DNA of 64,000 nucleotides from Botryllus schlosseri (taxonomy: Eukaryota). The stretch spans positions 19,344,001-19,408,000 of the forward strand of contig CM119386.1 in the NCBI GenBank assembly GCA_051294905.1, given 5' to 3'. This document shows, one piece after another, positions 3,930 to 61,681 of the stretch; within the stretch, counting starts at the first letter, position 1, and every line of letters starts with the position of its first letter. The notes under the pieces were generated by a model, which was not told the DNA's origin, did no database searches, and was given only the letters and a program-made list of their open reading frames with translations. The position numbers and the translations under genes are program-made.

Positions 3930-3930
3930 G

Positions 3931-3974: not shown

Positions 3975-4853
3975 TCATTTGTGTTTCCTCGTTAGCATGC
4001 TCACCGTGACAATCATGATTCCTAGTGATACATGATCCTTTCGGTGAAAGGATTTAACTTGACGATATAAATGATGGCAATGGGACTCCATGGATTGAAA
4101 TGGGTCGACAACAAAGGGACAAACGAATGTGCTTGTGCATCGTAACATTTGAACTTGCCGACATATAATCTCTTGGAAGAGATCGTTACTTGGTAATGAT
4201 AATGAATATTGTATATTTATTGCAAATTCCAAACAACATTAACTGATAGCGACTGAATATGGTGTAAGAAGGTAAATATATCAAAAATAATCACAGAGTC
4301 TCGCTAGAATGTCTTGAAAAAAATCCCAGTAGCCAGATAAATATACTCTTAGTCTTCACGACACGCATGGTACTATTCGTTGAATAATTAGGGCGGATAG
4401 AATGCTCTATGTAGAAGAATTAATTTTAGTAATGACTTATACATTGAGCGAGTGCCTATACCAATGTAATTATAGATCTTCGACCGATATCACGTTACCT
4501 GGACACTACATAATTCATATCATTAACATCAGATAATTCCGTAGCTTTCGCAAATATCGATACGGAGGATGCATTCTTTAAAACTTGTTTGTATTCGTGG
4601 CAGTACTTAGGGATCGCATTTGTCGGAATGAACAAGGTTTCATCGGGGCCTACGATAACTTAAGTTATCGTAGGCCCCGGTTTCATGTTTCATCAACCGT
4701 AATGTCATGCAGCTGTATAGTAGGCCAGCTTGTATTTGTTGCCATTCGTATGAACTCGGAATCACGTAACAGCGGCTCTGCACGGTGTAGGTATGCAGAC
4801 GTACAAGCCAGACTGCGAAGCATCAGAGAAATGATTAACCCGGCCAAACGCAT
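3975..4853 (-). pseudogene. Probable 2-exon secreted-protein gene, disrupted by a 50-bp insertion
   Basis: ATG 4853 begins MRLAGLIISLMLRSLACTSAY (signal-peptide-like). Removing the palindrome and the duplicated ATGAAAC restores the frame to donor AG|GTAACG (4499). A phase-2-compatible acceptor at 4188 continues to a stop at 3975, giving about 172 aa. Confidence 0.4.
4644..4679. repeat. 36-bp perfect palindrome flanked by GTTTCAT direct repeats
   Basis: CGGGGCCTACGATAACTT|AAGTTATCGTAGGCCCCG. GTTTCAT occurs at 4637-4643, 4680-4686 and again at 4687-4693. Confidence 0.95.
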
Positions 4854-7113
4854 TTTTGAATAGTTGAGTCGTGAATCTCGAGACACGCGTCTGTGTAACA
4901 TGAGCGGCTTCAACAGAGTCCATTCTTTACTTGGAACCAATGGTCGTCGAGATGCCGAACACTTGATGAACTGAGTTGTTATATTTCTTCATCAAAATCT
5001 CTTATTCGACGAATGCATCTGATCGTTTCAGCTTCGTTAGTCATCAATCACACAGTTTACACGACACATTTCCCGCATCCTGCAAACGTGTATATTCCTA
5101 CCATTTGAATTTGCTGGAGAATTAAGATCATGGCAGTTCTTATCTTCTCGCCTTGTCAGTTATTTACGGGTATCCCGTATGCACCATGCAAATTGAAGGA
5201 ATTTAATGAATACCACATTACCACAATGACTAGATACGTATTGGTAGATTAACCAATTACGGTAGAGTATCTAATTGTGTGTTGTCGTTCGTTATAAACT
5301 ATATAAACAACTAATATTAGGATCTGTCTAACCATAGACTTCTGCTATACGATTTAGCAGATTGTGTAGCTATTCTCATTGAAAATCACTATTTCTCCTT
5401 CTGGAGGATTCTTGACACTTACATTTATCTTTTGGTGTAGTCGTTATGTACTCGAGTAAATTGTCAAGTATTATCGCTCCGAGTGAAAATTAAAAGCAGA
5501 ATATAGGTCGCTTACTTTTCCCTGACTAAATTCCATGAAAAATCATCGTACATCCCCTAGATGCGCTGCTGATATTTGTAACCGAGCAACATACGAGCGT
5601 AAATACTAAGGAATGCCTGTAGAAATTGACAGACAGTTACTTGGATCTGTGTCGGTTTTTAACTTACAAAATATTTTGATTGTGTTCTGGAAATGAATCG
5701 GTCGGCTGAAAGCGTAATATGTTGAATTGTTCTAACGTGTGCACATCTCTGTCATCGCTGACATACCGTCATATAGTGTAATTACATAGACTGGACAAGT
5801 GGATGGGCAATTTGGCATATACCAATATGGTTAAAACGCGAATGACCTATTGTATTTAATAGCGGGCTGGTGTTAAACCGGAAACTCGCCGCGATTTCCT
5901 CAGTCGTTCACAAAACAGTACACCACCGTTATTGGTTTGCTATCCGGAAGAATGCTAATTGTTGGTGTTTTGTGACTCAAATTTCATTTCCGGCGCAATC
6001 CTGTATTGTATGCAGACGATCAAGCTTTGGAAAGAACTGGTCAATTGTTAAAGCCCAGCTGCAATTTAGAATATGCGGTAATGTTATATGATCGCCATGA
6101 AGGGCAAATGCGGATGGTGACTTTATAAATCCAGATTATGCTTAGCAGTAGTATAGGCCATGCTACCTGCAGACTACATATTAAGAGTCATGACTCTGAT
6201 ATAAATATTTTAAATAATAAATTCCACTCTATCAACGCCTGTTCTCGGTACTTCCAATAGGTCCCTGGAGCTCAATTTATAAACTTATAGCCATTCACAG
6301 ATATAACAGTATCGCCAAGACCGAAAAAGGTCACCTAGATTATTCTGCCGCGGATAGCTGATGCCCTTTCGACGATGGTAGTGTGATTCGACTCACAGAT
6401 TTTTGGGTAGACTACATACCGAGAATAGTTATTTCCATGAAAGGTTATTAGGAATATGCGATATCTGTATTCACATAAGGTTACGTCATATATCCAAATT
6501 TGACCCAATTTCATCCGTCAAATGTTAATTGGCCTCGACTTCCACGAAAATATCGGGCGTATCGTGACGCGATAAACACGCGCTTGAAACCAATCAGGAT
6601 GACTCATGTGTGTATCTATTGACAATCTGAGTTCGGTTAACTGCTCGTAGGGTCGGTAGACTTTTAACCCTAACTAAAGTTCGCAGATGAGGGCGTATAT
6701 TATGTAACTCTATTGTTTACTAATGCATTTGAGTTTCTGCAATGTGCATTCACTTACTTTAGTCATCCGAACTATTTATGCAACGCAATGGTATTACCCA
6801 CTCATGGTTCAGGGGGAATGTTTACAATGACACTGGCGTATGGCGAAATCATCTCAAGAATTCAATGATCTTTGACAAGTTCACACAATGACCGTTTAAT
6901 CAGGTCTAATATAATTACTGTGTTGCTGGATGCATGCTACCACCATAGCACACATAGACTCTAGGTTTCGGCTGAAATGCGGATACTAGATAACCATACC
7001 AGACTTGCAAAAACTAGCTTATAGTTGACCATAAAGCGTAAACTAACTACTGTTTGTTTTTAGTTTCACCAATTATAGTTTTTATGTTCTTGACCACAAT
7101 TTATCATTTAGTA

Positions 7114-7459
7114 TAGGGCTACTATATTTTGCAAATCTAAAAAGAGGACACTTTTTCAGAATTTTCAGACTTGCAAAACCGGAGGAGAATTCTCAAAAAA
7201 TGGTAAATGGTGCCCGAAATACAGTTTTTTACTTCACATTGTCGGGTGGTTGAATAAAAAAAGGTCGACTTCCCGCTCAGCTCCCGAAATACCCGACGGA
7301 GCGTCACTTCGGTGCTGCTTTACGGCATCTCAGTCGGATTTTGCTATAAATATAACCAATATTCTCAAAAACGAGGACAAAACGGCGACCTCCTAGGACT
7401 ATTTCAAAAAAGTCAAAAAGACGACAAATCCTCTTAAAAGAGGACGTATGGTAACCCTA
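7114..7459. mobile_element. hAT MITE, TAGGGTTACCATA family
   Basis: TIRs TAGGGCTAC.../...TATGGTAACCCTA; perfect TSD ATTTAGTA (7106-7113, 7460-7467); AAGAGGAC subterminal motifs. Confidence 0.9.
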
Positions 7460-7736
7460 ATTTAGTATAGGCCTTGATTGTCTACTGCCCGTTTTTTCTA
7501 CAGAGCTAATCGCGATCTACAAAAGTCTCACTTGGGCGTATCAAACCTGCTATTATCCATGCAAGATAGCAGTCTTCACCGATAGTATAAGTAAGTGCAT
7601 TGCAGTCCATCGAACATAAAAGTGTGGGCAACAATGTGGTCGTTAATATCATCACTATCTGCAGAGATTTATCGCAGAGAAACATCGCCACACACCTAGT
7701 CTGGATACCAAGGCATCACGACGTCGGATACAACTA

Positions 7737-8125
7737 TAGGGTTGCATTTAAAACTAAAATCAATTTGAAACAAACATATTTAGAACAAGGCCCTTGTTTA
7801 AAACATGTTTTTTTTCTATTGTCTTTTTCAAGCAATGACGTCACGTTTATTCAATTGTGCCGTCATGGTGTATTGGCATTGACAACTGAAAATGTAGGGT
7901 AGATATAGCTCCTTTGACGAAATACCTATGTACTATAGCTGTTGAACCGACTATTTTTGGGTTTCCAACCATCCCATATCGTACACGTCGGTCATATTGG
8001 GTGGTAATTGTCTGTATAGGCTCATACAACATGTTTTTTTGTAAAGTATTTACACAATTGTGGCATAATTTTACTACTTAAAAAAAACACAATTTTTTAT
8101 AGATTTCATTCCAAAACAAAACTTG
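7737..8125 (+). mobile_element. Truncated hAT MITE, TAGGGTTGCATTT family
   Basis: Left TIR plus a body homologous to 63164-63580 and to the reverse complement of 51125-51449. Right end not found. Confidence 0.75.
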
Positions 8126-11065
8126 GCATTTCGGCGCCAGTCATTACCGCTTCGCGACACACCAAGACTTCGGAAGTTTTGGCCAACATACGACTTCGCT
8201 AAGTGAGTTACCAAATGAAAGCTTGCGCGAAAATGACCGCCTCATGTTGGCCGAAATCATCAATATATATATTAATACCAATCGTCCATTGTCCATATAT
8301 AGGCCTAGGCGTGAAATGGTCTTTCACTTGCTATCTGAAGTCACCAACTCCTTCAGCTCTGCAAGTAAATCTTATCACGTGAACACGTGAACTAAGAGAG
8401 GATGAAAAATTATTAGCATTATATACAATTACCAATATTATAGACCTAATTCAATCCTGGATATGAAAATTTTCGCGCCTGGCGCGATTACTTACACCGA
8501 TAAACAAAATACCCACACCAGTAAAAGTTGCCTTACTGGTAGTCATAAAAAGGCCCGTCGTGAAGGGGCTGGGGGCAAAGCAAGCGAAGCCCCCGCATAA
8601 GTTTGGTATATGATCCTATGGGTGGCAACACCAACGTTTTGTGGGAGGAAGGGGGGCGGACGCAGTACTCTTTCGGCCCTGCCTGTAGCCAGAGTCGGCA
8701 CTACTAACAGAGGCGTAGCTAGGTGTAGGTTTGGGGGGTCGAATCTCCTCCCCTTTCATGTTCCCGTGGAAAGCTGATCAGATTCCGCTAAAATAAAAAT
8801 TAATGAGTTGTTTCGGGATTGAATCTAGTTCGTTAGGTTTTAGATAGCTACTTGCGGATTTTCAAAGGTCGTTAGTAATAGTAACTCACACCTCCTGGTG
8901 TTTGCGATGCGGACATTATAGCTACAACACTCCCGATTATTGCGCTACTGTGTTGGCAATAAAAGTAGCTCTGAGTTTCAACTCTGTGGTGAGGCGTGGC
9001 GTGGCGTTGGTTTCCAGCTGCACTTCGTTGAAGCTTATCCCGTGAGATGATGCTGGTGCGGATTCACATGTGTTATGCGATTTGAAGCTGATTGCTACAA
9101 CTAGTTATCTATCCCCGTTACCGCGCTACGCACGGACAACTCTAGTGAGCATAAGTGAAGGCGACATATAAGAGTGTGTAAGCCAGCTTCACTTTTCGCC
9201 TCACTTGTGAATCAAAAGGTGCAAATATTCAATTACATAGCATTATAAGACCGGAAACAAGTTCCCAAATTACGGTAATCCTTTATGCGTCAGTCTGGAA
9301 TTTGTCGGGAAGATACTAGACCGCCTTTCGACACACTGCCGGCAGTGGAACGCTTCAACGTAACCCGAATGACTTGCCACGAGCAAATTACCTACTTGAG
9401 AAACAAGCGCCGTGTGACACACGGTCGGAACACACGGCGACTTCCAGAAACTGCGGCTTATACCATATTTTATCGGGCACTTTTCGCAAACGCGCCGTTT
9501 TAGACGTCTTCGAGTTTCAGGATATGCGTGGATATCAATATCATTTCCTGTCACTGACTGCACCTATTTGCGTTCAAATTTATTCCAACATTCAATTAGA
9601 ATATCATCGAAGCCGTGTCCGCCGGGTCAGTAATAATTGACACCAATGGAGCCACGCCGTGTAGAGTCGCGTAATCATACCAACGGTTCGGAACTGATTC
9701 GATGTAAGCGAGTGAATCACAATCCCCTCGTGTTGTGTAACTCCGTTTCCATCTCGTGTTGCTATAGCGCGCCTCGCTAACCTTGAGCACAATGATGGAC
9801 GTAAAGAGGGAAACGCCTGATATGAATGCTATGTTTACAGTAGTGCTGAACACTAGAAATAAGTATGAATGTAAATGGGAGTGCAAGGCGGAAGAACTTG
9901 AATAATAATGATTGGTAGAGTAGCCCGCTTTCAATTCGTATCCCGCCCGAATAAGATGTTTTGAGCATGGCTCGTAAGTCTTGAGTTTCGGCATCGTAAC
10001 GGCATTAACCTCCAACACTGAACCATTTTGCAGCAAGCCGCACAATGATATCTGCGATTCATTGCAGCTCGCATCTTAGTGCTGCCTCACCAAGACATCA
10101 CAGAGAGCGCAATAGAATCTCGAGTCCTCATGCGTTCTCGTAACCTACGAAAACATGTTGCACAAGATGACAGATGTTCACTACGGTCAAGTGGCAGTCG
10201 TCGACCGCGCCAACTACAAGGCGTTATTTCATACTTATCGGTTGTCAAATGTTCCACATTCTTTGTGACGAAACACGTCTGACATAATCTTCTTTGTAGT
10301 CGTATTGAAAGCCAACCGTTCCACTGTCTCGTGTTTTTCAATGTATGCGTTTATTTATGGGGGCGCTCAACCACTCAGTAAACTCGAACACTACTTTGAG
10401 TTCACATTAAATCCCCCACATACTCATGTATTCTAGGCTTACTGTAGAATACCAAAATGACGCATTTTTAAAAATGTTATCCATGTAATAATACAGTCGC
10501 TTCGTGACACCTGTGTGATTACCAGGGGCCCTGCATGATATCATTTTAATACCCGTGCAATAATATGTCCACTTCTATGTCACCAGACTTTCGAGCAAAC
10601 TATTGTACTAGCCTACATACTACGTTGCTACTATTTCATAACGGTTCTGTTATCCAGTAAATCGGATTGCATACATAAATCTACTATGTCACGAACGAAA
10701 AGTACTAGCGAAGCAATGAAATCATGGGTGTTACGTAACATCACTATTTTAATCTTTTTGGACATCGAACCCGATACCCGCGTTCGCGTCCGGCGTTAAT
10801 TGTGCTTGGTAATGCTATTTCATATCAGTGTTGATAACGAATAAAAGGCCTCTCCCACTCTCTCTTAACTGAGCACTGAGCAGTACGGACGCCACTACTG
10901 AAATCCTTGAGTGTTTGGCATAGCTGAAGCGTTCCCATACCATTGTGATGACCCATTATATGCGCATTGTTGTGAGTGAATGAGCTTGTTCCGTTGACTA
11001 GGGAAACAGCTGACTGAGATTTCGCATTTCAGACAAGTCTAATCCAACTCTGCTGCGGGTTATAT

Positions 11066-48019: not shown

Positions 48020-50859
48020 CAGACATGGGGTAATCGCGATTAGTAATCGTAATCGATTACGGCGATTACAGCATTTCCAAGTAATCGTAATCGCAATCGA
48101 TTACATTCGAAAAAATTCCAAAGTAATCGTAATCGTAATCGACTACTTCGCATATCTAATCGATTTCTTTGTGTAATAACGATTACTTTTTATTTGTACA
48201 AGGACCATGACATAAACTGAACATTTCTGAACAAGGAAGCGATATTATATCAGGCTTATTGATAGCACCAACGTCCTATTTTCAAACGCCACTGCTCATT
48301 ATTACGTCAGAACTATTGGCTTTGCTCATCATTGCGTAAGAAGTATCCACACATAGTAAACAGATATCCGATGTACTATGTACAGCACATTGTAGGCCTA
48401 TATTGTAATGTGATTGTAAAAACACCCGCCCGTGCTTTATATCAGGTTTTCAGTGCAGTACAGACGTCACTCCTCGCAGCAAGATAATAATCACCACTCT
48501 GCCTAATTTCATATAGTAACATATTAATTGATGTTTAGGTAATGGGTATGCTTAATTAAACGCAGTTGGACCGTTGTTGTTTGGTGAGCCGTATGCCTAT
48601 GTATCTGGGTACGTACACCGCAAATCGATTTGAAATTTTGTACTACTAAAATGAGACATTACGATTTCCACAATGAAGCATTAAAAACGAACAGCTGCAT
48701 TTATATATCACATCCGAGCCTTTCTTTCTCGTAACGGCAGCTTGCAGCATATCTGTATTAAATGGAAGGCAGAATTTTATGTTCACTTTATCTTTTTCTC
48801 ATATGACTCTATTTGAAACGGGCGCCAATCGTTATTTTGCAATTCTTTACTCAATATTTGGACCTGCGCCATAGCCACCCGCTTATGCACCATGTTAGTG
48901 TGGGTTGTAGCTAGAATCAGGACCAATACAGCAATTCGTCCCCCAACTTCAAACGTTGGTTTCGGGCTGGCTCCCATAAGGTAGTCAATTTTCAGGTTGA
49001 TGACTGAAATTCGTTAGTTATATGGATAATTACATAATATTATTATGCATCTTCAATCCTCTCCCAGCCACCGATGTCCAGATTTACCGTTCGAGCTGCG
49101 AGCTCGTAATTCATATTTATAACATCTGATATGCTGTTATAATTACATTATTGCATGACGTCTGTTATATAATCAAAAGACATTGTAGTCACCCAAACGT
49201 GTAGCAGACTAAAAATGTCGAGGGACACACACAAATTCCCATGCATTCATTCCGCTGAGGGTGCCCGGGTTGCATCTGTATTTTGGGGTTCAGATTGGGA
49301 GGGCATGACTATTCATCACGTCCATCCATCGTGGCTATTGACCATTAACACATACCTAAAGTTTCGGCGTAAGACTTTTTTGCTAGCACACTTCGTGGAG
49401 TCCCATGTTGGCTGAAACTGCACCTGTCTTTTGGTGTGTCGTGGTGCGGTAATGACGTGCACCGAACTTCCTATTGCTATAAATTAGGCATGCTTTTTTG
49501 CTTAAGGGGAGACGTATGCATTTCAGAACCAAGGTATCTACAGAAATTAAATTGCGAAGCTTGACGAAAATTATCAAGTTGATTAAATTGCTCGAAAATA
49601 ATCTACAATTTATGTTGATTTACGAAAGACTTTTGATTGCCCTTCGAGCTCGCTCCAGGACCGTAACTATACCGCACCCCAAAACCCTCCAATGGGGGGA
49701 GGGGGCTCGAAGGGGGCCCAAAATAATTCCGTGAGTATTTTTTGAATATATATGCAACTTTATGCAACAACAATTTGATGGTGCCGAACCTCTTCGTTGT
49801 TGAGTACCATTCTCCAAGAAAAATACGCATGATTTATAGAAATTGTCAGTTCGGCGTCGGCCATTACCGCGCCACGACGCATCAAAACATATGAAGTTTT
49901 AGGCCATGCAATATGCAACTCCGATAAGTGTGCAAGAATGATAAGCAGCGAAATAAACTCGACCAACTGCCCTTATGCTGTCCGAAAAATTTTATATACA
50001 TACAAATATATCCAATTGTCCATAGCCTGACTGGCGTCAAATGTTCCTGTACTGACAATCTGCAAGACAAGTGCCACCCCGCAGAGAAGAAATATTTGCC
50101 AGTGGAGAAATACCAATTTGAAATCGTGTGCGTCTTTTAGTTTAATACGTTTGGGCGATTTTAATATCATCTGACATAGCAGACAGGAATACATGAAATA
50201 ACAACGGGCCCACCCGAATATGTTCATTGTTCAATTATTATTTACGGGCCCGACATTTTCCCGGGCAACACCTCACTCAGCGCTACCGGTAAATCTGATT
50301 ACATGGGCGGAGAGAGGATAAAAAAAATTATACCAGTATATATGCAATTCCCAATAATTTTGACCGAATCAATATTGAATTATATAAAATTATTAAAAAA
50401 AAAATATGATCCCATGGGTGCCCAAGACAAATGATTTTTTGGTGGGGAGAGGGGGACGACGTGATGTTTCGGCCCTTTCTCGCTCACCATCATATTAGGG
50501 TGTTGGGGTGCGGTAGTTACGAACCTGCCAAGAATGCAAATCGGTGGGTGCGATAAATCGTCCCCTCTAAAGTTGAGCAAATATTATGACGTAACAAGAA
50601 AATGACGTATCATCGATAAAAAGGTTGTTTTCAGGCCATTTCATCGTAATCCTAATATTGTCTTCCAATAAATTTTCTTGGTTTTCTAAGCAAAATGAAT
50701 GTAATCGTGAGTAATCGTGATTACTTTGCCAATGTAATCGTAATCGTAATCGACTACTTCCTGATTTTGTTGTAATCGTAATCGTAATCGTAATCGTGGG
50801 ATTCAGAAGTAATCGTAATCGCAATCGATTACATTCATAAAGTAATCACCCCATGTCTG
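48020..50859. mobile_element. Large (GTAATC)n hAT, copy 2, nested level 3
   Basis: TIRs CAGACATGGGG / CCCCATGTCTG; perfect TSD GTAGGAAG. Confidence 0.92.
49656..50477. mobile_element. CAGG(A/G)CCG-ended element nested in copy 2, level 4
   Basis: Absent from copies 1 and 3; flanked by GCTCGCTC / TCTCGCTC; the body resembles the reverse complement of 31190-31440 and 46960-47290. Confidence 0.7.
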
Positions 50860-53256
50860 GTAGGAAGCATAGTTTCTCTGCATGCTCACCCAGCTAAACT
50901 CGTCCTGCAAGGGTAAATCTGTCATATATCGCCCTTTGCGTCGTCGATTTCTTGAGATTGAGAACACGGAGCATTGAATTTCCGAAATTTTTGATTTTTT
51001 TTTTAAAGATAAAATATCGGCCGCGATATCGGCCTTCATAGGCCGATATCGATATTCGGGAAAGCTCCGAATATAGGCCTCGACAATCGGCCATGTCGAT
51101 AATCGGTCGACCTCTAATAATTATGCCATAATTGTGTAACTACTTTCCAATAAGCGTGTTGTATGAGCCTGCGGACGATTACCATCCGATATAGCCGACG
51201 TATACGATATGGGATGGTTGGAAACCGCAAAATAGTCGGTTCCACAGCTATAGTACGTAGATATTTCATCAAAGGAGCTATATTTACCCTATATTTTCAA
51301 TTGTCAATGTCAATCTATTATGACGTCACAATCGAATATTCCTGACTTCGTGGCATGAAAAAAAAATACAATAAAAATCATTTTTTAAACAAGGGCCTTG
51401 TTTTAAAAATGTTTGTTTTGAATTCATACTTGTTTTAAATGCAACCCTGGTTACCTCTCCAATACCGATTCAGAGGCGCGATGAACTCTACTCGTAAAAG
51501 CGGTTATTTAGCGCACTGTGTCGGATACCGCGCGTAATAGGTTATTGATCATGATTTGTATCGCTGATGAGTGACGTAGTGCCGATATTGAGATCACAAG
51601 TACAAGTAAAATACGATTTATAATTACCTATATGCAGGTGCAACGCTGGACGGGTCTAACAATGTTGCCATATGCAATCAGTGCATTCAGCAATAACAGC
51701 GAAACTCCGCGTTGAGTAGAAATGCCTAAGTTCTCGATTGCCAATATCGCATTTTAGCAAGAGTAAATTGCGTGCATTCGATAACACTTGCGATGCAAAA
51801 CCAAAATAGCACGCTAGTCACTCGGCGAAGGAATTTTTTATGGTCTGCTGAACCATAACATAACTGCAGTAGGTACAGGTCACTATTGACATTTCGAGAT
51901 TTCAGCAAAGAGGGAGTCAAGTTTACCAGCATGAGAGCGGCGATGCATCATCCAGTACTGGGAAGAATAGGTTTTGTCCTAGCTTGGTTAACCGTTTTCA
52001 ATACTAGAGCACAGGAGTTTTCAAGTTCACGAGAGCAGGTACTATATAAAGGTTTCTTGAAATAATGTTTGTTCTGGTATAGCTTAAACAATTTTGTGTT
52101 GTTCTAGTTTTTTTTTTAGAACAGAGGTACTCAAACTAGAGGTAACGTAATTGATTTTTGGGACCGCAGCGAGTATACCAATTTCACACCGAATACTACT
52201 ATGGATGTAATGACGGTCCGACTTGGAGACTTTGCATACATTCCATACAGTGATAATTACAGCCAGTAAAATGGTTCCCGAATCCCTATACTTTAGAGTT
52301 ATATAACGGAGAAGCAGGTTTTCCATGTGTCGTCGTCACGGAATCACCTTCAACTTTCTTTGTATCGTTGAGTAGTTTTAAGGCCGGCGCAACGATTAAG
52401 TAATCGAAACCGAATCAAGTATCAATTTTGATGATTCGAGTCGGCTACAGTGACAGTCGATGTTTTTGAGTAGCGACATGATACGCACGATGACACAAAT
52501 AATTATTTTATCAACGGTATAATAATTGTTTCGATAATTCCTTCCCATCGTGCCAACATCCAAATTTCGCTTCGCATAGTGTTATATCGTTAAAAAATAC
52601 ACTAGAAGGCTACGCATGTTTATGGTAACTATAATACATTCCCGTGATATATCAATCGATCTGCTGTATAGCATTGTCACAGTGATGCGCAATGTCATGG
52701 TTAGTATTAACAAACCTGAAATCATATTGATTAAGTGTAACTGGCATTATTGATTTCGATATCGCGCGAAAGGTACTGGAAGAATTCCGTATACCTAGAT
52801 ATCAGAGTTGAGTGTCGCAATGCAACTATACAGCACCAACTATCGTTGTTTGTTTTATTAAAAAGCACGGATAACAATAAAAGAAATCACGAAGCCTGGG
52901 TTTTTAATGATTTAAAATAGGGTAGCAAAACGGAAAAAATGACGTGTTTCGGGCTCGGGTTTACGAGAGTTGAGAACAACTCATGTCACCAGGATTAATC
53001 AACGACTGCAATGATGCACATCAGACATCACAAACCATCGATTCTTTCAAATAACGCCTGAAATGGCTGGACGAGTGGACAATGCTCAATGGGTGTGCAA
53101 CTAATGGGTGTTGTTGTTGTTGTTGCATTGAATTGTGGTGCTCGGCAGCAATGGCCTTGTGGCCGATTATTTTTGTATTATACAATTTAATGTCCCTTCC
53201 GGTCAGCATACTCATGAGTGTATGTATCCGTACATCACGGGTGGTGAAATGAGGGG

Positions 53257-53533
53257 TTGTTTGTTGTTCGCGGTATTCATGGTGTTTGTCGACTACTATG
53301 GTCATTTACACCAGGCCGATATTTTTGATTTTTATTCCGTAACTGCCGACTTATAGCACGGTCCACTTCTAGGCTTGTTGTACGACACTGCTTACGCGGA
53401 TGAGATGGCGAGGAGGAGCCTAGATAAACCTCCAACACTTAGGTAAGGGAATTCGGAAGTCGACCTCGGTCGGACTCGAACCCGCAACCCATTGGTGTTG
53501 CAGCCGCGGATTATGCCACTGCGCTATCTCGCC
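53257..53533 (-). mobile_element. Full-length tRNA-derived SINE (~277 bp)
   Basis: A-box TAGCGCAGTGG, B-box GGTTCGAGTCC, AAC-rich tail; 20-bp TSD ACGGGTGGTGAAAT(G/C)AGGGG (53237-53256, 53534-53553). Confidence 0.88.
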
Positions 53534-53712
53534 ACGGGTGGTGAAATCAGGGGTGAAATCCTGGGTTTTAAATGATATAAAATAGGATAGTGAAACTGCG
53601 AAAAAGGCGTATCGTGCTCGTGTTTGCGAGTGTTGAACTATGATACGGAGAAACACTCGTATGATCAACGACTGCAATGATGCGTATCGGATATCACAAA
53701 CAATCGATACCT

Positions 53713-53940
53713 ATATATTCTTTCAAATGACGCCTGACATGGCCGGGCCAGTGGACAATGGACAATGGACATGCAATGTAATTGTAGGCAGACTTGGACA
53801 AATAATTAATTATAATAAATACATTAATATATTCTTTCAAATGACGCCTGACATGGCCGGACCAGTGGACAATGGACAATGGACATGCAATGTAATTGTA
53901 GGCAGACTTGGACAAATAATTAGGTATAATAAATAAATTA
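53713..53940. repeat. 114-bp near-perfect tandem duplication
   Basis: Two units starting 53713 and 53827; a diverged relative lies at about 52997-53100. Confidence 0.9.
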
Positions 53941-54345
53941 AAATTATAATTGTAGTAAGACTAATTAGACTATTTCGAGGAGAAATACCGAAAACCTGCT
54001 TCTAATCTAATTTGTGAAATGTTTCTATGCTCCAATTTTAATTCGCATCTAATTTCTGGATTTCCTGGAACTGCTACGGAACTGTCGCAGTGCGAGAGGA
54101 GGCAAGATTGATGTTCAGACATTTGTCATTCTCTTATGAGGATAATTCTGATTTGATATGAACTGAACTGTAATTTTTTTCAACTTCTTTGTAAATCGGA
54201 ATTTAATCTGCAAGTTTTTGAGGATTCAGTAATTCTGATGTTAATTCAACTTAAAACTGTGTTTAATCACAGTTATAATCTAATTTGAACAAGGTGAAGA
54301 TGGAGGCGCCTTGCTTTCATTCAATATTTTTATTCATTTACACAG

Positions 54346-57300
54346 CGATGCCATTACCGGGATACAAGCTATGGCATTGGTCAACGTTTTGTACTCAACC
54401 GGGAAAGTAAAGTCTTCCAATGTACGTGTGCGGTCGGAGCACAAATACGTTGCACTTGGAGTCCCACTAGTGAGTATGACTGCTGGTGATTTTCAAAATA
54501 CAAAAACATACAAGGAGATAATTAAGTCGCTGCTTAATTAAGCCTCGCCGAGCACAAAATGCTACGACAGAGTAACGCGAACATGGAAACCACCGGGATC
54601 GTCATGGGAGCGAATCCGAAACGGGAGAACTCTTGACTGTTCATGCATTAGAGGATCATCTGGCATGCAAGTCTCTTGCAGCGATGAAAGTATGCTAACA
54701 GGGTATATCATGAAGCCGACTACATATCATGTTTTAAGAAAACATCCGATTTTCCAGATAGATGTCACCATAAAGGAATTTCACACAGAGCGGGGACGCA
54801 ATTTGAGACAACTAGTGACTCCGGAAGGCATATGAATTGTGAGTGCCTGCAAGGAAAGAAACTTACTTGCACATATCGTGGTTAGTATACACATACATGG
54901 TTATTCTTAACAGAATATTTTATGTCGGCACTTCATAGTTCAGAAGTCTCAGATGTCTGACATTATTATCGACCAAAGAAGGGACGTGTCCAATCTTAGC
55001 TATCTGTAGTGTCACTCCGGTCAGTAGGCTGCTCAAGTATAGGCCTTACCCGAGCATAAGCAATAAGCGTAAAGTGTAGCGCAGGCGTCGCCAACTCGAG
55101 GGCCACAAAATTCGTAGAGGTATCGAGAGAACGTATAAGCCACGCAGTTTCACAACCACGTTTTTATAACTTTACGTCTGTACAACGCTGTGCTCTCTTA
55201 CATGGGCGACGGGCATAGCACCACAAAAGTAATAATATTTTATTATTGAAACACAAATGCAACAAAAAAATATCATAATCATCACTTTCATTCTATTGCG
55301 AACTATGATATGCGTGCGATACCTGGCAACACTTTTCAGCGACTACAAAAATCGATATTGGGTTTAGATAGACACGGTACTTGCTGAAAAACTATCTCAT
55401 CGTAAAGCTTGGTCTTTTCAATTTCAGCATTTCAAAATGCTTTACTAAGCGTTTTGCCGAATATGAACTCGCGGGCAGCGTGTTGGTAACCCCTGGCGTA
55501 GCGTAGCGATTCGCAAGACATGCCAAAACTACTTCAAGTGGCGGTAAAAATGGAGGTCTGGCATGTTGGCTACTTGGGTATTTTTAAAACGGAGATTTTG
55601 TGGAGGGATTACACACTTTTAGCACTTTATCCGATGTATCTACATTTTACTTTCTGAATTGCAATATGTATCTTCACGACCAACGCAGACCGGCTATAAT
55701 GACTCTACAAATATGTGCGATTTCCGAAAATAAGTTCAGTTACCGCGACGCAGAGGCCAAAATTGCCAAAATGTTATAACAAGTCCCTTTGTCAAAACAT
55801 TGAACCTTGTCAGCTACTAGTCAGCGTAAATTTGTCCAACCCATTTTCGCTGTAGAGATGTTAACACCATCTGCACAATGCACACGAAGTTTATGATTCG
55901 ATTACAAGCTTGGATGATACCATGTCTTTGTCTAAATATTCAGCACCCAGTCATTTCAAGGAACAAGCGAACGTTTGATCGTTTCAGTCAGCAATGTATG
56001 AAAACGACCTCCACTATATTATATATAGAGACCGTGCCCGCCCCAGCGACAAATTCGCCAAGAAGAGAAGACTATGTATTACGCGAGCCACAAGTTCTTC
56101 ACCCACAAATTTGGACCCTACAAGCTTGCAGGACAGGAGAAAAGGTATTTCAGGCCCATATTGAGTTGTATTCGGTTACCGACAGTATTTATCGAATTCA
56201 TCAAGGTTGTGACGAACGGGGCAGTCTGGAATCAGACTAACACGGATGCTTTCGGTGTGAAAATGCTCGAGGAATGCACCTGTGAGAATGCTATCGTTAA
56301 GTGCAAGCGGCTGCGTGTTGTAGATCGAATCGGTGAGCCTGTAGCTGAGTTGCTTTGTATGATATACCAATGCATTTAGCGTTATGCGTGAAGGCACATG
56401 GCTTGATTGCGTATGCAAATGTAGGCTACATAAAGGTTGATAATCTTTTCGACCAACATGGAATATTCGTCCGCGCAGTTCCCACCCGACGCCTATGTTT
56501 TTTCATGTTTAAGATCTCTAAATATTTTCGAAATAACATGTAGCCTGAGCATGAAAACCACTTATTGAACCAGAAATAGAAGACGGACATGTTAATAAAC
56601 CATCGATGTATACTCTGTATCTGTATATTTTTGCAGTTGCATGATATAATATGGTGCTGGTCGGATAAACGGGAAATCGTTTGTTTCCGTAAGACGCGAT
56701 GTTACGGATTCGTAGCGAGCACAGATTTCTGCTCTCAATAAGGCTACAATACTATGTGCGGTTTCAAAACGGCATTTTCCGCGACCACGGTATACGCTAC
56801 GGAGATAACTTCACCCATAAACTTGTTTTAAGTCCATTCATATACCCGAACGGATCAATTTGAAGCCATTGCAAAAGAACTCATTCGAGTACATGTAGAT
56901 TTGCATTTAAAACAAAAATCCATTTACAAAATATGCTTCAAACATGACCCTTGTTTAAAACATGTTTCTTTAGCCATGGCATCACGAATATTCAATTCTG
57001 ACGCCATAGTAGTTTGGTATCCTTTAGCGAAAAAAAAAGTATATTTGACCAGGACTGCATCGTCATGCAGCATTTTTACGGTCGGCGGTGATCATTATCA
57101 GAACATCCATTCCACCCTAGTTACTATGTGCTATAGTGCTACATAATCATTGAACCGCGGATGATTCCGAGAATTCTAACCATTCCATATCGTAATATCG
57201 TATGCATCGAAAATATCTGGCGCAATCGGCCCTACGCTAATACTAGATATTTGTTCAAAGGCATTAAAACAAAGTTTTTTTTAAACACCTCTTGTTGCGA

Positions 57301-59945
57301 CAGACTTTACATGTATTTGGAGAAAAGGCTAGTCTGCTACTGACTACGGATCACTGATCTTTGTTTCTTGCGCGAATAATATGTTACCACATCACTTGAT
57401 GCTGATGTCTTGATTTCGAGTAATAGTACTTGAATCCCATAAGGAACTGTGACTACACGAATCTCATTTATGATTGTGATCACTTCTAGATAGGTCGTCA
57501 TTTATGTTTCATATATTTCCATAACGCAGAGCCACATTGCACATCACTGGATGGACGACTTCGCCTCGTTGGTAAACGTTGGATTCGAAGACGCGAGCGC
57601 TATCCGCACCAAGAATACATATGCGAATGTTACGCGCACGAAAAATCTCGATGCAGAAGAACTCGTGGTAAGCAGAGCGACGGTTATCTCCATTCACTCA
57701 AAGCAGATTGCTGACATGCGATAATATTTACAATATTTATGTATGATATAAGTGGTACGGTTGAGAAAAATGTGATGACAGATCAGAGTCGATCCGAATA
57801 CCCCATGTCCTCATTCGAATCGAATAAAATTGAATTCAGCAGAGTTGGAGTAATTGTTATTGGCGTTAATTCTCGCAATAGCATCTTCATTACATTCGCG
57901 ATTGCAAAATCGGTAAAGCGTTTTGTCGTGAAATGTAATAAAAACGAACTACAATCGATATTCCAGGATATGTGAACTGTCCAGAGTAGGTAACGCTTGG
58001 ACCAAAGTGTTGAGTGAGCAAAAGATTCGCTGTTTGTTTGGAATTAGTATTGTGACGCCGAGTGAAGTAGCAGTTTCGAGTTCACGTTGGTGTTCACGGC
58101 AAACCGTTCATTTAAGTTAGGGTTACCATATTTGGGAATCGGGAAAGGAGGACACCTATACCAAAACAGCTGCTCTTGCTACTTTTGCTGGAATTTTGTT
58201 TCGATTTTCAACAAACCTGTTCATTATCCTAGCTGTAAAAGTGGTAAAGGAGGAATAATTGCCAAAAAGGCGGACATTTTCAAAATCCTGAAAAGGGAGC
58301 ACAAATCCTCCCAAAGGAGGACGTCTGGTAACCCTATTTATGTTCATGTTCAAGCGAACCAGAAACTGTCAGGGGCACTGGTCCCTCTAAGCTGCGCCCG
58401 TGCGCAATTACGCAGTGCTGATACAGTCTCTGAACACAGAAATCTAAGGTGCGCACAAGGAGGCCGAAGTGATGACTTTTTTTAGTCGTTACGCACTATG
58501 CTGTCCAATGAACCGAGTAGTGAGTTGGTGAGTGCGCGCACACTCGTAAAAAATTATAGGGAACATTGGTCAGGGTTTCGCACCATCCCTAACGTCAGTC
58601 AGTACAAAAAATGGATAATTGTTATTGTAGTTCCATACTGTTTGGATGATGTTGCCGGCGAAGTACGTACGGCTGGTGACCAGTGGAAAAGAGTCCATGA
58701 AACAGTTGAAAATTTGGTTTTTCAATGTACTTGCAATGATGACAGAAGCATCACTTGTAAAGATATAGGTGAATATCGTATTTTAAAAGAACATAATAAT
58801 TTAATTGATATGGTTTCAATATTCAGGAAAGTGTAGCGAGCCGCCATCTCCTGTCAATGGTGCTATTCTTTGTGCCAATATTGGGATAGCTGGCGGAGAT
58901 CATGTGGTGTATTGTAAACCGATGTGTCTTGCGGTATGTTAATCATTCTTCCTACGGTATTGTGAGTTGCAACACCCCCTTCATTCGTCTGCCAGGATTA
59001 TGAATTCATCAATCCAGAGAGATATTTTCGGATTTGGGAAGCATGCGGACCGATGAATCTACACCGATGGAGCGGCGGTTTCCTGGGAGATCCAGATGCA
59101 ATCGCGAGATGCAAAGGTATAAAATGAAGTTACCGTTCGTAATGAAAACCCCGCATTACGACGTATTAAACTATTGTATATCTCTCCATGGTAAGTACAA
59201 TACGCCTATACAGTTTTGCTTTTGTAACGATCAAACAATATCGCGACGTTATTTACAGTCAAAACCTATATTTGTAGATCAAATATTATAATAATAGCAT
59301 CTGAGTTCGTGATATGCATGCCATTAGTTGTTAGTAAGGGCGCGAAAGTGTCTATTGATAGGACAAGACCTTTGTGAAACATAGCCTGTTGGACCGGATT
59401 TTTTGACCAAGATAGATGATTCCCACCCTTTACTTACGGGAATATGAATGCGTTGCAAGCATCAACTATATTTTCGTGATGCTATTATATAATGTAGAGT
59501 CCATTTTCAAATCCGCACCAATGTTTAGCAATATATAGCCGCCAACTATTTATTCGCACCTAATAGGACAGTAGGATAGCCTGGACTGTTATATTGTTAT
59601 GATTAGCCGGGGAGATAGCATAGTGCCGGTGAGAACCGCCGCCATCTACGTGGCGGTCCGGGTTCAAGTTCCGCCGTCGTAGGTTATTCTGGGCTCCTCG
59701 TATGCCGTGTCACTGTTCTTACGGCGACATAAAAGCTCAGAAAAATGACCCGATAAAGAAAGAAAGAGCAAGAAAAAGCTTCTAAAAAATTACCGAATAA
59801 GAAAGATTAACATCGAAAAAGACTGTGACATCGGGCACTATAGGTTGATGAGGATGCCAGTTTAAGAGACTACAACTTGTCCTGCATCCCCCTCATCTGT
59901 TCATTACATCGCATTGTGTATTGTATATTGCATGGTAAATTGTGT

Positions 59946-59987
<42 letters not shown>

Positions 59988-60458
59988 ATGTGTGTGTCTT
60001 GGGCAGATGTAAATATAATCTGACAATTATTACGATTATTTTTATTACCAATATAATTCATTAACAATCGCATTTGAAGGTGAGTCACAAATAACAAATA
60101 ATAATCATTATCCTACTACATTATAAATGACGATTGGATACAGCCGTCATCTGCATTGTATTTTATATATGCCCGATTCTCTTTTGCAGCACGAAGCACG
60201 GGAAATCGTCGAGGCCATTCGAATCTTTACCTTCCCACAAACGATTGTTCTGGGATGAGTAACCTTGAAATAGAGCAGGTCGGTTTCCAATGGTTTAGTA
60301 TTTGAAAAAAAAATCTTACACATATAATGCTGATAATATTCAAACGCATACACGTATGTTTGCAGCAAAAGGATCTCTTTCTTCGTCAGTTGCAGTTTCG
60401 CAACCTGTGCAGCCGCAAATGCCAGATCACTGTTTTCAAATGCGGTGCGGTGGAATAA
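54346..60458 (+). CDS. 5'-incomplete gene: at least 6 fibronectin type I-like modules, a Sushi/CCP-like module and a Cys-containing C-terminal segment (440 aa recovered)
   Basis: Exons 54346-54469, 54543-54689, 54758-54880, 56029-56144, 56206-56332, 57530-57667, 58631-58768, 58827-58933, 58996-59116, 60190-60278, 60366-60458 total 1323 nt, GT-AG, phases consistent, no internal stop. Each module has 4 Cys (C..G..W/F..CxC..C), e.g. CYDRVTRTWKPPGSSWERIRNGRTLDCSCIRGSSGMQVSC. Confidence 0.8.
55082..55495. mobile_element. hAT MITE (intronic)
   Basis: TIRs CAGGCGTCGCCAAC / GTTGGTAACCCCTG; TSD GTGTAGCG / GCGTAGCG. Confidence 0.8.
58118..58336. mobile_element. hAT MITE, TAGGGTTACCA family (intronic)
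   Basis: TIRs TAGGGTTACCA / TGGTAACCCTA; imperfect flanking duplication TTTAAGT / TTTATGT. Confidence 0.8.
59609..59780 (+). mobile_element. tRNA-derived SINE-like element (second family) or tRNA pseudogene
   Basis: A-box-like TAGCATAGTGCCGG, B-box-like GGGTTCAAGTTCC, purine-rich tail. Confidence 0.55.
59941..59984. repeat. (GT)n microsatellite
   Basis: Direct reading. Confidence 0.95.
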
Positions 60459-61681
60459 AAGAGGCAGCGATTGTAAAAGCATATATGTGCCCTGGTCTGA
60501 GTTCACAGGCTTATATATATACTGCATGTGTACTTCCCGCGCGGGTTAAATTCGACTACGTCGATTTTAATCAATTACAATTATGGAAGTTAACGATTGT
60601 CCAGTCCATCCCTCTGTATTTTCTCACGGGTGGTAAGCGATGTTATTGAAACATGCTGGGTTGTATGTACGATGCTAAACAGTTGTAATTCAATGGATTG
60701 TTGCCAAATTCTTCAAATTAAGTAATCAATTCACTCTAAATATAAATAAATATATATATATTGGTTGTAGATGACTGCTTACATTTTTATGTAAGGGTAT
60801 TTTCACGGGACAGATGACGCCGAATACTGTCGCACCGGCCCCTTCTTATTGCGTATGCTTCAGACATGAATCCGTGAAAGACAACTCCCACTAGGGGCAC
60901 AACACTCGATATTGAACATATGTCTCCTGCAATCATATACCCAATGCTGCCATAAAGTCCTTATGAAACTACATTGTTGTTATTTCTAAAATGGTAATAT
61001 GCCGATCAGAGGTAATCAAGTAAGTTTTTTTTAAATCTAACGGGTTGCATTCAAAGTGATCGGTCATGAATCAATGTCATGAGTCAAAGTTAGCAGCTGG
61101 CCAGTAGATGGGTTTAAGTGGATATTAATTACTCTTGGGGTTTTCATATACCATTATTCTTTATAACATTTACCATATTTGATTGTCTTAATCATACAAA
61201 TTGATTTTACTCCTTATATGTTCAAAATTCGACCGTATACTTTTGACTCAAGTCCTATCCCGGTCGAAGTCGAGCTTATTTTGTCTTGTTTCCTACCATT
61301 AGAAAAACTATTTTATCGCTCTTGTATCAGCATCGTAGCTCGAATTTTCCAACAGGATAGAACACGTTGTAGGCATTTGGTGCCACATTCACCGAGATTT
61401 GCCGTGATCCCAATAACGTCCGAAAAGACCTCGTATAACGTTCAGTAGAAACACTGAGCATAAGCATAAGCACCGAGAGCTCTGTGATTTCACAAATCGT
61501 AACGCACCCCAGACTGATTTGTATACAAATAGCAGGGATATCTAGATATCCCTGACAAATAGTGAAGGGTGATTGGAAATCGGTTGAACCGTGTTCTAGC
61601 TGGGCTTCCAAACAGGTCACAGAGGTTAATACGAGGGCACTGGGCATTCATCAAATAGGCTACTCCTGCGGATGTTGTGTC

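What the first reader, a model, noticed from the sequence alone, without database searches (positions are those of the whole stretch)
54346..60458. Tandem fibronectin type I-repeat protein with a Sushi-like tail and no FN2/FN3 domains
Seen: eleven exons splice into one open frame with six 4-Cys modules (RCHYRDTSYGIGQRF..CTC..C; KCYDRVTRTWKPPGSSWER..CSC..C; RCHHKGISHRAGTQF..CEC..C; ACRTGEKVVTNGAVW..CTC..C; HCTSLDGRLRLVGKRW..CEC..C; YCLDDVAGEVRTAGDQWKR..CTC..C), mostly one per exon with phase-1 boundaries. These are followed by CSEPPSPVNGAILC..CKPMC..DYEF..CG..W..C and a short C-terminal segment. Known: FN1 is a 4-Cys class 1-1 module largely confined to chordates (fibronectin, tPA, factor XII, HGF activator). 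Inference: this FN1-array + CCP-like architecture is none of those proteins and may be an undescribed matrix/adhesion protein relevant to how the fibronectin N-terminal array arose. The signal-peptide exon was not found. A possible degenerate seventh module may lie at about 56380-56690.
Basis: partly seen in the sequence, partly recalled or inferred. Interest (0 to 1): 0.8.

Follow-up and report, generated by a model that had tools for sequence, protein, structure and literature searches.

The report
Sea-squirt secreted FN1-repeat protein gene
This is a real, expressed sea-squirt gene for a secreted protein made of six fibronectin type I-like modules plus an unnamed Sushi-like end domain; relatives are predicted in other ascidians but I found no study of any of them.

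Summary
Eleven + strand exons at 54346-60458 splice into one 440-codon frame. RNA confirms nine of the ten junctions. A likely signal-peptide exon lies at 51931-52038, giving an intact 476-aa ORF.

Five of the six 4-Cys modules are FN1 homologues:
- A profile of the window modules hits only fibronectin FN1 fragments in PDB (E 6e-11).
- Among 1.84 billion proteins it hits only this family, vertebrate fibronectins, one unnamed metagenome cluster and one annelid protein.
- An HMM built from vertebrate FN1 modules scores the spliced protein 34.7 bits, against at most 12.6 in 20,000 shuffles.
- The orthologue's model superposes on fibronectin 2F1-3F1 (TM 0.81).

Module 4 has the Cys pattern but no significant FN1 score.

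The "Sushi" tail has no Pfam or PDB sequence hit. Its first ~80 residues fold weakly like CCP modules (Z 4-4.7). The whole 137-aa unit matches models of an uncharacterised fish protein family (si:ch1073-126c3.2; the zebrafish member is a plasma protein).

Orthologues are predicted in Styela, Ciona (once auto-named "fibronectin"), Phallusia and an unnamed ascidian transcriptome. There are no FN2 or FN3 domains, no seventh module, and no paper on it. FN1 stays within its known tunicate-plus-vertebrate range. It is a new architecture of a known module type, of moderate interest.

The parts
51931..52038 (+). Candidate first coding exon: ATG plus a hydrophobic signal peptide, 36 codons, donor CAG|GTACTA, phase 0
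   Evidence: It came from a scan for Met + hydrophobic stretch + phase-0 donor, and the sequence was read. It completes a 1431-nt, 476-aa ORF, the same length as the 477-aa orthologue. Its residues 13-36 fall inside BLASTP alignments to the Styela, Phallusia and metatranscriptome orthologues. The 149 bases around it are held in full by the RNA-type runs that otherwise hold only the exons (X15, X12, and X17/X18 at 0.82). An X15 contig aligns from 54343, as expected if ...CAG is joined to 54346. The junction itself was not seen.
54346..54469 (+). Exon with FN1 module 1 (phase 0 to 1)
   Evidence: Junction 54469>54543 in RNA contigs. The vertebrate-FN1 HMM gives this domain 15.3 bits. No Pfam hit on its own.
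54543..54689 (+). Exon with FN1 module 2 (phase 1-1)
   Evidence: Junctions. Pfam fn1 20.7 bits. 11.5 bits.
54758..54880 (+). Exon with FN1 module 3 (phase 1-1)
   Evidence: Junctions. Pfam fn1 18.1 bits. 22.3 bits.
56029..56144 (+). Exon with a ~32-aa Pro-rich linker and the first Cys of module 4 (phase 1 to 0)
   Evidence: Junctions 54880>56029 and 56144>56206 in raw reads and contigs. The linker has pLDDT under 40 in the orthologue model.
56206..56332 (+). Exon with the rest of module 4, a divergent 4-Cys FN1-like module with a conserved WNQT sequon (phase 0 to 1)
   Evidence: Junctions. hhalign against FN1 gives probability 3%, P 0.015, in the correct register only. No domain hit. Positionally conserved in all orthologues.
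57530..57667 (+). Exon with FN1 module 5 (phase 1-1). This module is present in the window, P0001 and Styela and absent from the Ciona, Phallusia and metatranscriptome orthologues
   Evidence: Junctions. hhalign against FN1 gives probability 87%, E 3.8e-6. A 43-column gap in the five-module orthologues.
58631..58768 (+). Exon with FN1 module 6 (phase 1-1)
   Evidence: Junctions. Pfam fn1 19.2 bits. hhalign against FN1 gives probability 96.8%, E 2.7e-10.
58827..58933 (+). Exon with the first half of the CCP-like part of the C-terminal unit (phase 1 to 0)
   Evidence: Junctions. The fold match to CCP modules is on the orthologue model.
58996..59116 (+). Exon with the second half of the CCP-like part, including the conserved HRWSGG motif and the last Cys (phase 0 to 1)
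   Evidence: Junctions 58933>58996 and 59116>60190. This is the most conserved stretch of the family.
60190..60278 (+). Exon with the start of the helix-plus-strand extension of the C-terminal unit (phase 1 to 0)
   Evidence: Acceptor confirmed by RNA contigs. Colinear with orthologues.
60366..60458 (+). Last coding exon, with three Cys and the TAA stop. AATAAA at 60454-60459 overlaps the stop
   Evidence: ORF and splice sites. Colinear to the last residue with P0001 and Styela. The junction 60278>60366 was not covered by the reads laid.

Best explanation
A 12-exon protein-coding gene (51931-60458, + strand) of a stolidobranch-like ascidian. The taxon is inferred from the nearest orthologues.

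It encodes a ~476-aa secreted, Cys-rich modular protein laid out as follows:
- a signal peptide;
- three closely spaced canonical FN1 modules;
- a flexible ~35-aa Pro-rich hinge;
- one divergent FN1-like module and two more FN1 modules;
- a 137-aa C-terminal unit, with a CCP/Sushi-like beta-sandwich carrying an extra Cys pair, extended by a helix and a strand with four more Cys.

It belongs to a conserved ascidian family with 5 or 6 FN1 modules. It is distinct from the large tunicate fibronectin.

Shown here: gene structure, transcription and splicing, FN1 homology of five modules, conservation, and the absence of FN2 and FN3.

Inferred: the protein is extracellular. Its FN1 arrays bind extended peptide segments of fibrous matrix or blood proteins by beta-strand addition, as FN1 pairs of fibronectin do. 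The C-terminal unit supplies a second binding or assembly site. I put about 0.9 on the identity and architecture and about 0.4 on this mechanism; the confidence figure given for this explanation (0.8) refers to identity and architecture together with secretion.
For: - Splicing and expression. Intact ORF.
- First exon.
- FN1 homology: Pfam fn1 on modules 2, 3 and 6 and 46.7 bits against a cutoff of 27 on orthologue P0001.
- The window-module profile hits only fibronectin FN1 chains in PDB, best E 6.3e-11.
- Among 1.84e9 proteins the same profile gives 18 hits at E<1e-3. Those I identified are this family, vertebrate fibronectins or their fragments, one unnamed metagenome cluster and one Capitella protein.
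- A vertebrate-FN1 HMM scores 34.7 bits, against at most 12.6 in 20,000 shuffles.
- hhalign against FN1: E 2.7e-10 for module 6 and 3.8e-6 for module 5.
- Foldseek of the orthologue model: 3cal 2F1-3F1, TM 0.81, rmsd 2.1 A, 36% identity.
- Family: orthologues at 65% (P0001), 54% (Styela) and 30-34% (Ciona, Phallusia, metatranscriptome) identity, colinear end to end.
- All complete orthologues start with a hydrophobic signal peptide and have no other hydrophobic segment.
- C-terminal unit: model pLDDT 80, pTM 0.77. CCP modules are the top hits for residues 2-82. The whole unit matches fish si:ch1073-126c3.2-type models at TM 0.67-0.75.
- The zebrafish protein is an abundant liver-made plasma protein (PMC4829857, PMC3547925).
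Against: - No window module alone reaches Pfam's 27-bit cutoff.
- Module 4 is not significantly FN1 and is poorly modelled.
- The structure evidence comes from a 65%-identical orthologue, not the window protein, and the full-length model has mean pLDDT of only 61.
- There is no Sushi HMM hit at E up to 10. CCP fold scores (Z under 5, Foldseek E about 0.6) are in the range the tool warns can be common arrangements.
- The exon 1 junction and the last junction were not observed.
- Nothing here tests ligand binding, localisation or tissue of expression. Depth in the one raw RNA run was low.
Confidence: 0.8

Rival explanations
1. The protein is a humoral (haemolymph) factor for clotting, wound sealing or microbe binding rather than a structural matrix or adhesion protein. 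On this view the FN1 array captures fibrin-like or microbial peptides and the CCP-like unit works as in complement-type proteins.
For: The only relative of the C-terminal unit with any data is a liver-secreted plasma protein of zebrafish (PMC4829857). CCP modules are typical of complement and selectin proteins. From established knowledge, FN1 fingers of tPA and factor XII act in blood, and fibronectin 1F1-5F1 is the target of bacterial adhesins; PDB entries 3cal and 2rky show that complex.
Against: The link to the fish protein is a similarity between two predicted models only. No expression site is known for the ascidian gene. No protease or lectin domain is present.
Confidence: 0.3
2. The modules are not FN1 but another small 4-Cys module, such as the VWC N-terminal subdomain, a PSP94-like module or a TIL-like module, and resemble FN1 only by Cys spacing.
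For: Single modules are below Pfam's cutoff. Module 4 fails all FN1 tests. From general knowledge, VWC subdomain 1 is FN1-like in fold.
Against: No VWC, PSP94 or TIL hit appears at E up to 10 on the window modules or up to 1 on P0001. The profile finds only FN1 chains in PDB and only fibronectins outside the family, apart from one unnamed cluster and one annelid protein. hhalign gives E 2.7e-10. The model superposes on crystal FN1 pairs at TM 0.8.
Confidence: 0.03
3. The locus is a decaying or non-functional copy, or the 5' part of the true fibronectin gene mis-read as a separate gene.
For: The first exon junction was not seen. RNA depth was low in the one raw run.
Against: The 476-codon ORF is intact and all splice sites are canonical. 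Spliced transcripts appear in several independent RNA data sets. A stop codon with an overlapping AATAAA follows a C-terminus conserved to the last residues in six other sequences. Complete orthologous transcripts of 1.8-1.9 kb encode just this protein. Ciona fibronectin is a separate 3698-aa protein (PMC5006582).
Confidence: 0.03

Closest known systems
Fibronectin N-terminal FN1 array (1F1-5F1) of vertebrates, and the FN1 modules of tunicate fibronectin (Ci-FN)
   Same: The same module type. It has 4 Cys in the C...CxC...C spacing, a G-x-x-W/F motif and 37-45 residues, mostly one module per phase 1-1 exon, with short linkers between neighbours. There is 31-33% identity over three consecutive modules to lamprey, sturgeon and loach fibronectins, and the model superposes on 2F1-3F1 and 4F1-5F1 crystal structures.
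   Different: It has no FN2 or FN3 modules, no Ig modules and no RGD. It is 476 aa, against 2,200-3,700. A Pro-rich hinge splits the array 3+3. Module 4 is strongly divergent. It ends in a CCP-like unit that fibronectins lack. No one-to-one orthology of its modules with particular fibronectin modules could be resolved.
Single-FN1 'finger' proteins: tPA, factor XII, HGF activator
   Same: Secreted proteins in which FN1 is combined with other class 1-1 modules by exon shuffling. This comparison rests on general knowledge, not on a test here.
   Different: Those proteins carry one FN1 (factor XII, tPA, HGFA) together with EGF, kringle and serine protease domains. None of these is present here.
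Predicted ascidian orthologues: Styela clava XP_039272990 (LOC120347174), Ciona intestinalis XP_002126304 (LOC100175487; UniProt F6YJ24, once auto-named 'fibronectin'), C. savignyi H2ZGH9, Phallusia mammillata CAB3246632
   Same: The same architecture end to end: signal peptide, FN1 modules, hinge, FN1-like modules and the same C-terminal unit. Identity is 34-54%.
   Different: The Ciona, Phallusia and metatranscriptome proteins have five modules, not six, and lack the counterpart of window module 5. All are automatic predictions, and no paper in the library names them.
CCP/Sushi modules (MASP-1/2, C1s, selectins, factor H, CD46, beta2-glycoprotein I)
   Same: The start motif is C-x-x-P-x-x-x-x-N-G, with Y-C, then C, then W, then a final C. 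The predicted beta-sandwich aligns to CCPs over 58-69 residues at 2.2-3.0 A. The extra Cys pair recalls the six-Cys CCPs of selectins and beta2-GPI domain V; that comparison is from general knowledge, plus a lead.
   Different: There is no Pfam Sushi or Sushi_2 hit at E up to 10. Z is only 4-4.7. The domain continues into a ~55-residue helix-plus-strand extension with four more Cys, which packs on it to form one 137-aa unit.
Fish 'si:ch1073-126c3.2' family (uncharacterised; the zebrafish member is a plasma protein), and similar units in amphioxus, Lingula and mollusc multi-domain proteins
   Same: The whole C-terminal unit superposes at TM by query 0.67-0.75 over 114-143 aligned columns. The language-model feature search picks the same clusters first.
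   Different: This is prediction against prediction at 17-25% identity. Their sequences could not be fetched, so sequence homology is untested. My FN1 profile search did not find them.

Membership tests
FN1 module (Pfam PF00039) | A module of ~40-45 residues with four Cys spaced C1-x(20-30)-C2-x-C3-x(6-12)-C4 | tested here: met
   All six modules fit. The Cys align with FN1 Cys in HMM alignments.
FN1 module (Pfam PF00039) | Significant match to FN1 profiles | tested here: met
   This is met for modules 1, 2, 3, 5 (weaker) and 6. Pfam gives 18-21 bits per module, below the 27-bit cutoff singly, and the orthologue's whole protein scores 46.7 bits. The profile against PDB gives E 6e-11 with FN1 hits only. 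The vertebrate-FN1 HMM gives 34.7 bits, against a shuffle maximum of 12.6. hhalign gives E 2.7e-10 and 3.8e-6. It is not met for module 4.
FN1 module (Pfam PF00039) | FN1 fold: a small double plus triple antiparallel sheet | tested here: met
   The AF2 model of 65%-identical orthologue P0001 was compared with fibronectin crystal structures: 3cal TM 0.81 at 2.1 A, 2rky TM 0.73. Module 4 was too poorly modelled to judge.
FN1 module (Pfam PF00039) | Disulfides 1-3 and 2-4 | not testable with these tools
   Model coordinates cannot be read here. This needs a disulfide map or a solved structure.
FN1 module (Pfam PF00039) | A class 1-1 exon module, one module per exon with phase-1 introns on both sides (general knowledge of FN1 genes) | tested here: met
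   Modules 2, 3, 5 and 6 are phase 1-1. Module 1 is phase 0/1. Module 4 is split by a phase-0 intron.
Fibronectin (the protein) | FN1 arrays combined with FN2 and a long FN3 array | tested here: not met
   Only fn1 is found on P0001, P0010 and P0011. The ORF ends at 60458 with a stop and AATAAA. Complete orthologous transcripts encode 477 aa.
Sushi/CCP (Pfam PF00084) | Match to the Sushi profile | tested here: not met
   No Pfam family at E up to 10 for any of six C-terminal units. No PDB sequence hit.
Sushi/CCP (Pfam PF00084) | Four consensus Cys, a Trp before the last Cys and a CCP beta-sandwich | tested here: inconclusive
   The pattern is present and invariant in the family. Most of the top VIA matches are CCP modules, but at Z 4.0-4.7 and Foldseek E about 0.6.
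si:ch1073-126c3.2-like C-terminal unit (unnamed) | A ~125-135-residue unit: CCP-like sandwich plus helix and terminal strand | tested here: met
   TM 0.67-0.71 in AFDB clusters, E 7.8e-6 to 1.9e-4. TM 0.73-0.75 in the ESM Atlas. This is fold level only, and sequence homology was not tested.
VWC (PF00093) and PSP94/microseminoprotein | Match to the family profile | tested here: not met
   No hit on the window modules at E up to 10 or on P0001 at E up to 1.

The most novel reading that the evidence does not exclude
This ascidian family may be a free-standing FN1 array that diverged from the fibronectin N-terminal array in the tunicate-vertebrate ancestor. It may work with the tunicate fibronectin, which has only three N-terminal FN1 modules, in matrix assembly or clot-like reactions. 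Its C-terminal unit may define a previously unnamed extracellular domain family shared with an abundant fish plasma protein and with lophotrochozoan and amphioxus proteins.
Probability: 0.2. Interest if true: 0.7.

Novelty: new variant of a known kind. Interest (0 to 1): 0.45.

Why it matters
FN1 modules are usually discussed only in fibronectin, tPA, factor XII and HGFA. Accounts of fibronectin evolution mention just one fibronectin-like gene in tunicates (PMC4422808, PMC5006582).

A second, conserved tunicate gene built almost entirely of FN1 modules gives a small, tractable protein for two questions. One is what an FN1 array did before, or beside, fibronectin. The other is how module number changes by exon gain or loss, since this family has six or five modules.

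Its C-terminal unit also links it to an abundant but unstudied fish plasma protein, which points to an unnamed extracellular domain family. The gene is already predicted in databases and lies within the known taxonomic range of FN1, so this is a useful annotation and a lead, not a surprise.

Tried and rejected
- **Seventh module at 56380-56690.** It lies in the spliced-out intron and has no counterpart in orthologues.
- **ATG at 54300.** It has a signal-peptide-like ORF just upstream of exon 54346, but it is out of frame with module 1. RNA depth fits an exon starting at 54346, and no indel is seen in DNA contigs there. I take it to be chance.
- **FN1-like pattern at 49979-50074 (+) and 48670-48771 (-).** These are isolated, lack the G-x-x-W motif and are not part of the transcript.
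- **My first-pass exon bounds (54557 and 56125).** These were corrected from the RNA junctions.
- **Word-index protein searches.** Searches with the family profile and with the C-terminal profile found only the family itself and one fragment. The fish, amphioxus and Lingula proteins seen by fold search could therefore not be fetched or aligned.
- **Swiss-Prot fold search of the C-terminal unit.** Nothing significant.
- **Earlier scan notes.** One unrelated note nearby, and none on FN1 or Sushi.
- **tRNA scan of the SINE-like intron repeat.** No tRNA gene found.
- **Module tree.** With 40 columns it cannot say which fibronectin module, if any, is the counterpart of each module.
Full report
**What is in the sequence**

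All lie on the + strand between 54346 and 58768. The full module pattern occurs five times in this gene, with a sixth copy split by a small intron. It occurs only twice elsewhere in all six frames of the 64-kb window. The window contains no N.

**Gene structure and transcription**

I laid one raw RNA run (X23), two contig sets that hold only the exonic fraction of the locus (X8, X15) and one DNA set (X1) on 54250-60249. Nine GT..AG junctions were found: 54469>54543, 54689>54758, 54880>56029, 56144>56206, 56332>57530, 57667>58631, 58768>58827, 58933>58996 and 59116>60190. None of them appears in the DNA contigs.

- It also corrects my own first-pass bounds. Exon 2 begins at 54543. The exon before module 4 begins at 56029 and adds a Pro-rich linker of about 32 residues.
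- Modules 2, 3, 5 and 6 are each one exon with phase-1 introns on both sides. Module 1 is phase 0/1. Module 4 is split by a 61-nt phase-0 intron.
- The last junction (60278>60366) was outside the 6,000 bases allowed. It rests on colinearity with orthologues to the last residue.
- The TAA stop at 60456-60458 is overlapped by an AATAAA.

**The missing first exon**

A scan for Met, a hydrophobic stretch and a phase-0 donor upstream gave one good candidate at 51931-52038. It has 36 codons and the donor CAG|GTACTA. Four observations support it:
- It makes the ORF 1431 nt (476 aa), against 477 aa in the nearest orthologue.
- Its residues 13-36 fall inside BLASTP alignments to the Styela, Phallusia and metatranscriptome orthologues.
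- The 149 bases around it are held completely by RNA-type runs that hold only 8-17% of the 6.2-kb gene body, which is the exonic share.
- An X15 contig aligns from 54343 with 22 further unaligned letters. That is expected if an exon ending in CAG is joined to 54346.

The junction itself was not observed.

**Are the modules FN1?**

The evidence for FN1 is as follows.
- Pfam gives fn1 as the only family, for modules 2, 3 and 6 (20.7, 18.1 and 19.2 bits, each under the 27-bit cutoff). It gives nothing for VWC or any other family at E up to 10.
- A profile of the six window modules (A1) hits ten PDB sequences at E below 0.03. All are fibronectin FN1 fragments, and the best is E 6.3e-11.
- Against 1.84 billion representative proteins the same profile gives 18 hits at E<1e-3. 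Those I identified are four members of this family, vertebrate fibronectins or their FN1/FN2 fragments (lamprey, hagfish, sturgeon, skate, loach, salmonid), one unnamed metagenome cluster (P0017) and one Capitella protein.
- An HMM built only from lamprey and paddlefish fibronectin FN1 modules scores the spliced window protein 34.7 bits, against at most 12.6 for 20,000 shuffles of it. Domain hits fall on modules 1 (15.3), 2 (11.5), 3 (22.3), 5 (1.7) and 6 (10.1).
- Profile-profile comparison with the 22 vertebrate modules gives E 2.7e-10 (probability 97%) for the module 6 group and 3.8e-6 (87%) for module 5.
- Module 4 gives only P 0.015 against FN1 and 0.005 against module 6, although in the right register.
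- An AF2 model of the closest orthologue superposes on fibronectin 2F1-3F1 (3cal; TM 0.81, 2.1 A, 36% identity) and on 4F1-5F1 (2rky; TM 0.73). Fibronectin entries fill nearly all of the significant hits. The model's mean pLDDT is 61. Most modules are at about 65-85, while the hinge and module 4 are below 40.

My conclusion is five FN1 modules plus one divergent FN1-like module.

**The family**

The nearest relative is P0001 (477 aa), translated from 1.8-1.9-kb transcript contigs of two public runs. It is 65% identical and colinear from residue 28 to the end. Further orthologues are:
- Styela clava XP_039272990, "uncharacterized LOC120347174" (54%);
- Ciona intestinalis XP_002126304, first auto-named "fibronectin" and now "uncharacterized LOC100175487" (34%);
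- C. savignyi H2ZGH9;
- Phallusia mammillata CAB3246632;
- a marine metatranscriptome protein.

P0001 reaches Pfam's fn1 threshold at 46.7 bits and shows no FN2 or FN3. All complete members begin with a signal peptide and have no other hydrophobic segment.

The window, P0001 and Styela have six modules. Ciona, Phallusia and the metatranscriptome protein have five, and their alignment shows a one-module gap. In a module tree, modules 1-4 group by position across species. Modules 1-3 fall in an unresolved group with the fibronectin modules. Modules 4-6 form a separate group with support 99/88. With 40 columns the tree is only a rough guide.

The window is therefore from an ascidian, closest to the stolidobranch Styela. 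Tunicates are already known to have FN1 modules: Ci-FN has 3 N-terminal and 3 C-terminal FN1 (PMC5006582).

**The tail**

The last 137 residues are the best conserved part of the family. They have no Pfam hit at E up to 10 and no PDB sequence hit.

Modelled alone, the unit gives pLDDT 80 and pTM 0.77. It forms one compact unit: a beta-sandwich (residues ~1-80), then a helix and a final strand.
- Residues 2-82 align best with CCP modules: MASP-1 Z 4.7, E-selectin SCR 4.3, MASP-2 4.2, then C1s, factor H, DAF, CD46 and beta2-GPI. They cover 58-69 residues at 2.2-3.0 A. Foldseek E-values are only about 0.6. These scores are within the range the tool warns can be non-specific. I therefore call it CCP-like and do not file it as a Sushi domain.
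- In AlphaFold DB clusters, the whole unit matches unnamed fish proteins of 147-276 aa, one of them named si:ch1073-126c3.2. TM by query is 0.67-0.71 and E runs from 7.8e-6 to 1.9e-4.
- In the same search it also matches a Lingula SVEP1-like protein (residues 715-842) and a Branchiostoma protein (residues 237-361).
- The ESM Atlas shape search gives the same fish clusters at TM 0.73-0.75 and a mollusc EGF/HYR/Sushi cluster at 0.66.
- The feature search ranks the same clusters first, but below its 0.9 guide value.
- In zebrafish, si:ch1073-126c3.2 is an abundant, male-biased, liver-made plasma protein of unknown function (PMC4829857, PMC3547925).

I could not fetch these sequences, so homology at the sequence level is untested.

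**How it probably works**

Shown here: this is a spliced, expressed, intact and conserved gene for a protein with a signal peptide and no membrane anchor.

Inferred from the known behaviour of FN1 pairs, which bind extended peptides by adding a strand to their triple-stranded sheet (as in the PDB complexes that matched):
- The two three-module arms are joined by a flexible Pro-rich hinge.
- They bind unstructured segments of matrix or blood proteins.
- The C-terminal unit gives a second interaction site.

Whether the setting is matrix (about 0.4) or haemolymph (about 0.3) cannot be decided here.

**Comparison, novelty and verdict**

It is not fibronectin, tPA, factor XII or HGFA, and it is not VWC or PSP94. 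No paper in the library names any orthologue. The two reviews of fibronectin evolution that I read mention only the large fibronectin-like gene in tunicates.

The gene is already predicted in public databases and lies within the known taxonomic range of FN1. I therefore rate it a new architectural variant of a known module family and of moderate interest.

Noticed in passing
P0016 (Capitella teleta ELU16596.1), residues ~95-400: An annelid hypothetical protein with several 4-Cys modules (C-x-x-P-D-G-R ... C-x-C ... C) matches the window-module profile at E 1.6e-5. Its Pfam fn1 score is only 15.3 bits. In the module tree its modules sit in the same unresolved group as the fibronectin modules. 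This may mean FN1-like modules exist outside chordates.
   Followed up: partly
window 55050-55450, 56850-57250, 58050-58250, 58450-58650, 59650-59850: Introns carry high-copy interspersed repeats. Summed contig depth is 1,000-8,700 in the DNA run, against about 12 for unique sequence, and is also high in the RNA sets. The 59600-59700 stretch looks tRNA-derived by eye, but ARAGORN finds no tRNA.
   Followed up: partly
window 59941-59997: A (TG)n microsatellite of ~28 units sits in the intron between the CCP-like exons and the tail exons. DNA contigs show many alternative joints there.
   Followed up: no
window 53713-53941: A tandem duplication of a 114-nt unit (2 copies, 96% identical) lies in intron 1. 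Each copy contributes the same peptide repeat to a spurious ORF.
   Followed up: no
window 54300-54410: An ATG opens a short ORF with a signal-peptide-like hydrophobic start just upstream of, and overlapping, exon 54346. It is in a different frame from module 1. RNA depth does not support transcription upstream of 54343 as part of this exon.
   Followed up: partly
P0017 cluster (ENA metagenome contigs, 143-188 aa): An unnamed protein cluster from environmental assemblies carries FN1 modules at 46.5 bits in Pfam. The source organism is unknown.
   Followed up: no
window 54591-54798 and elsewhere in the exons: RNA contigs from other samples of the same species label differ from the window at several exonic positions, and most laid records are 95-99% identical. 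This points to high polymorphism in the species.
   Followed up: no
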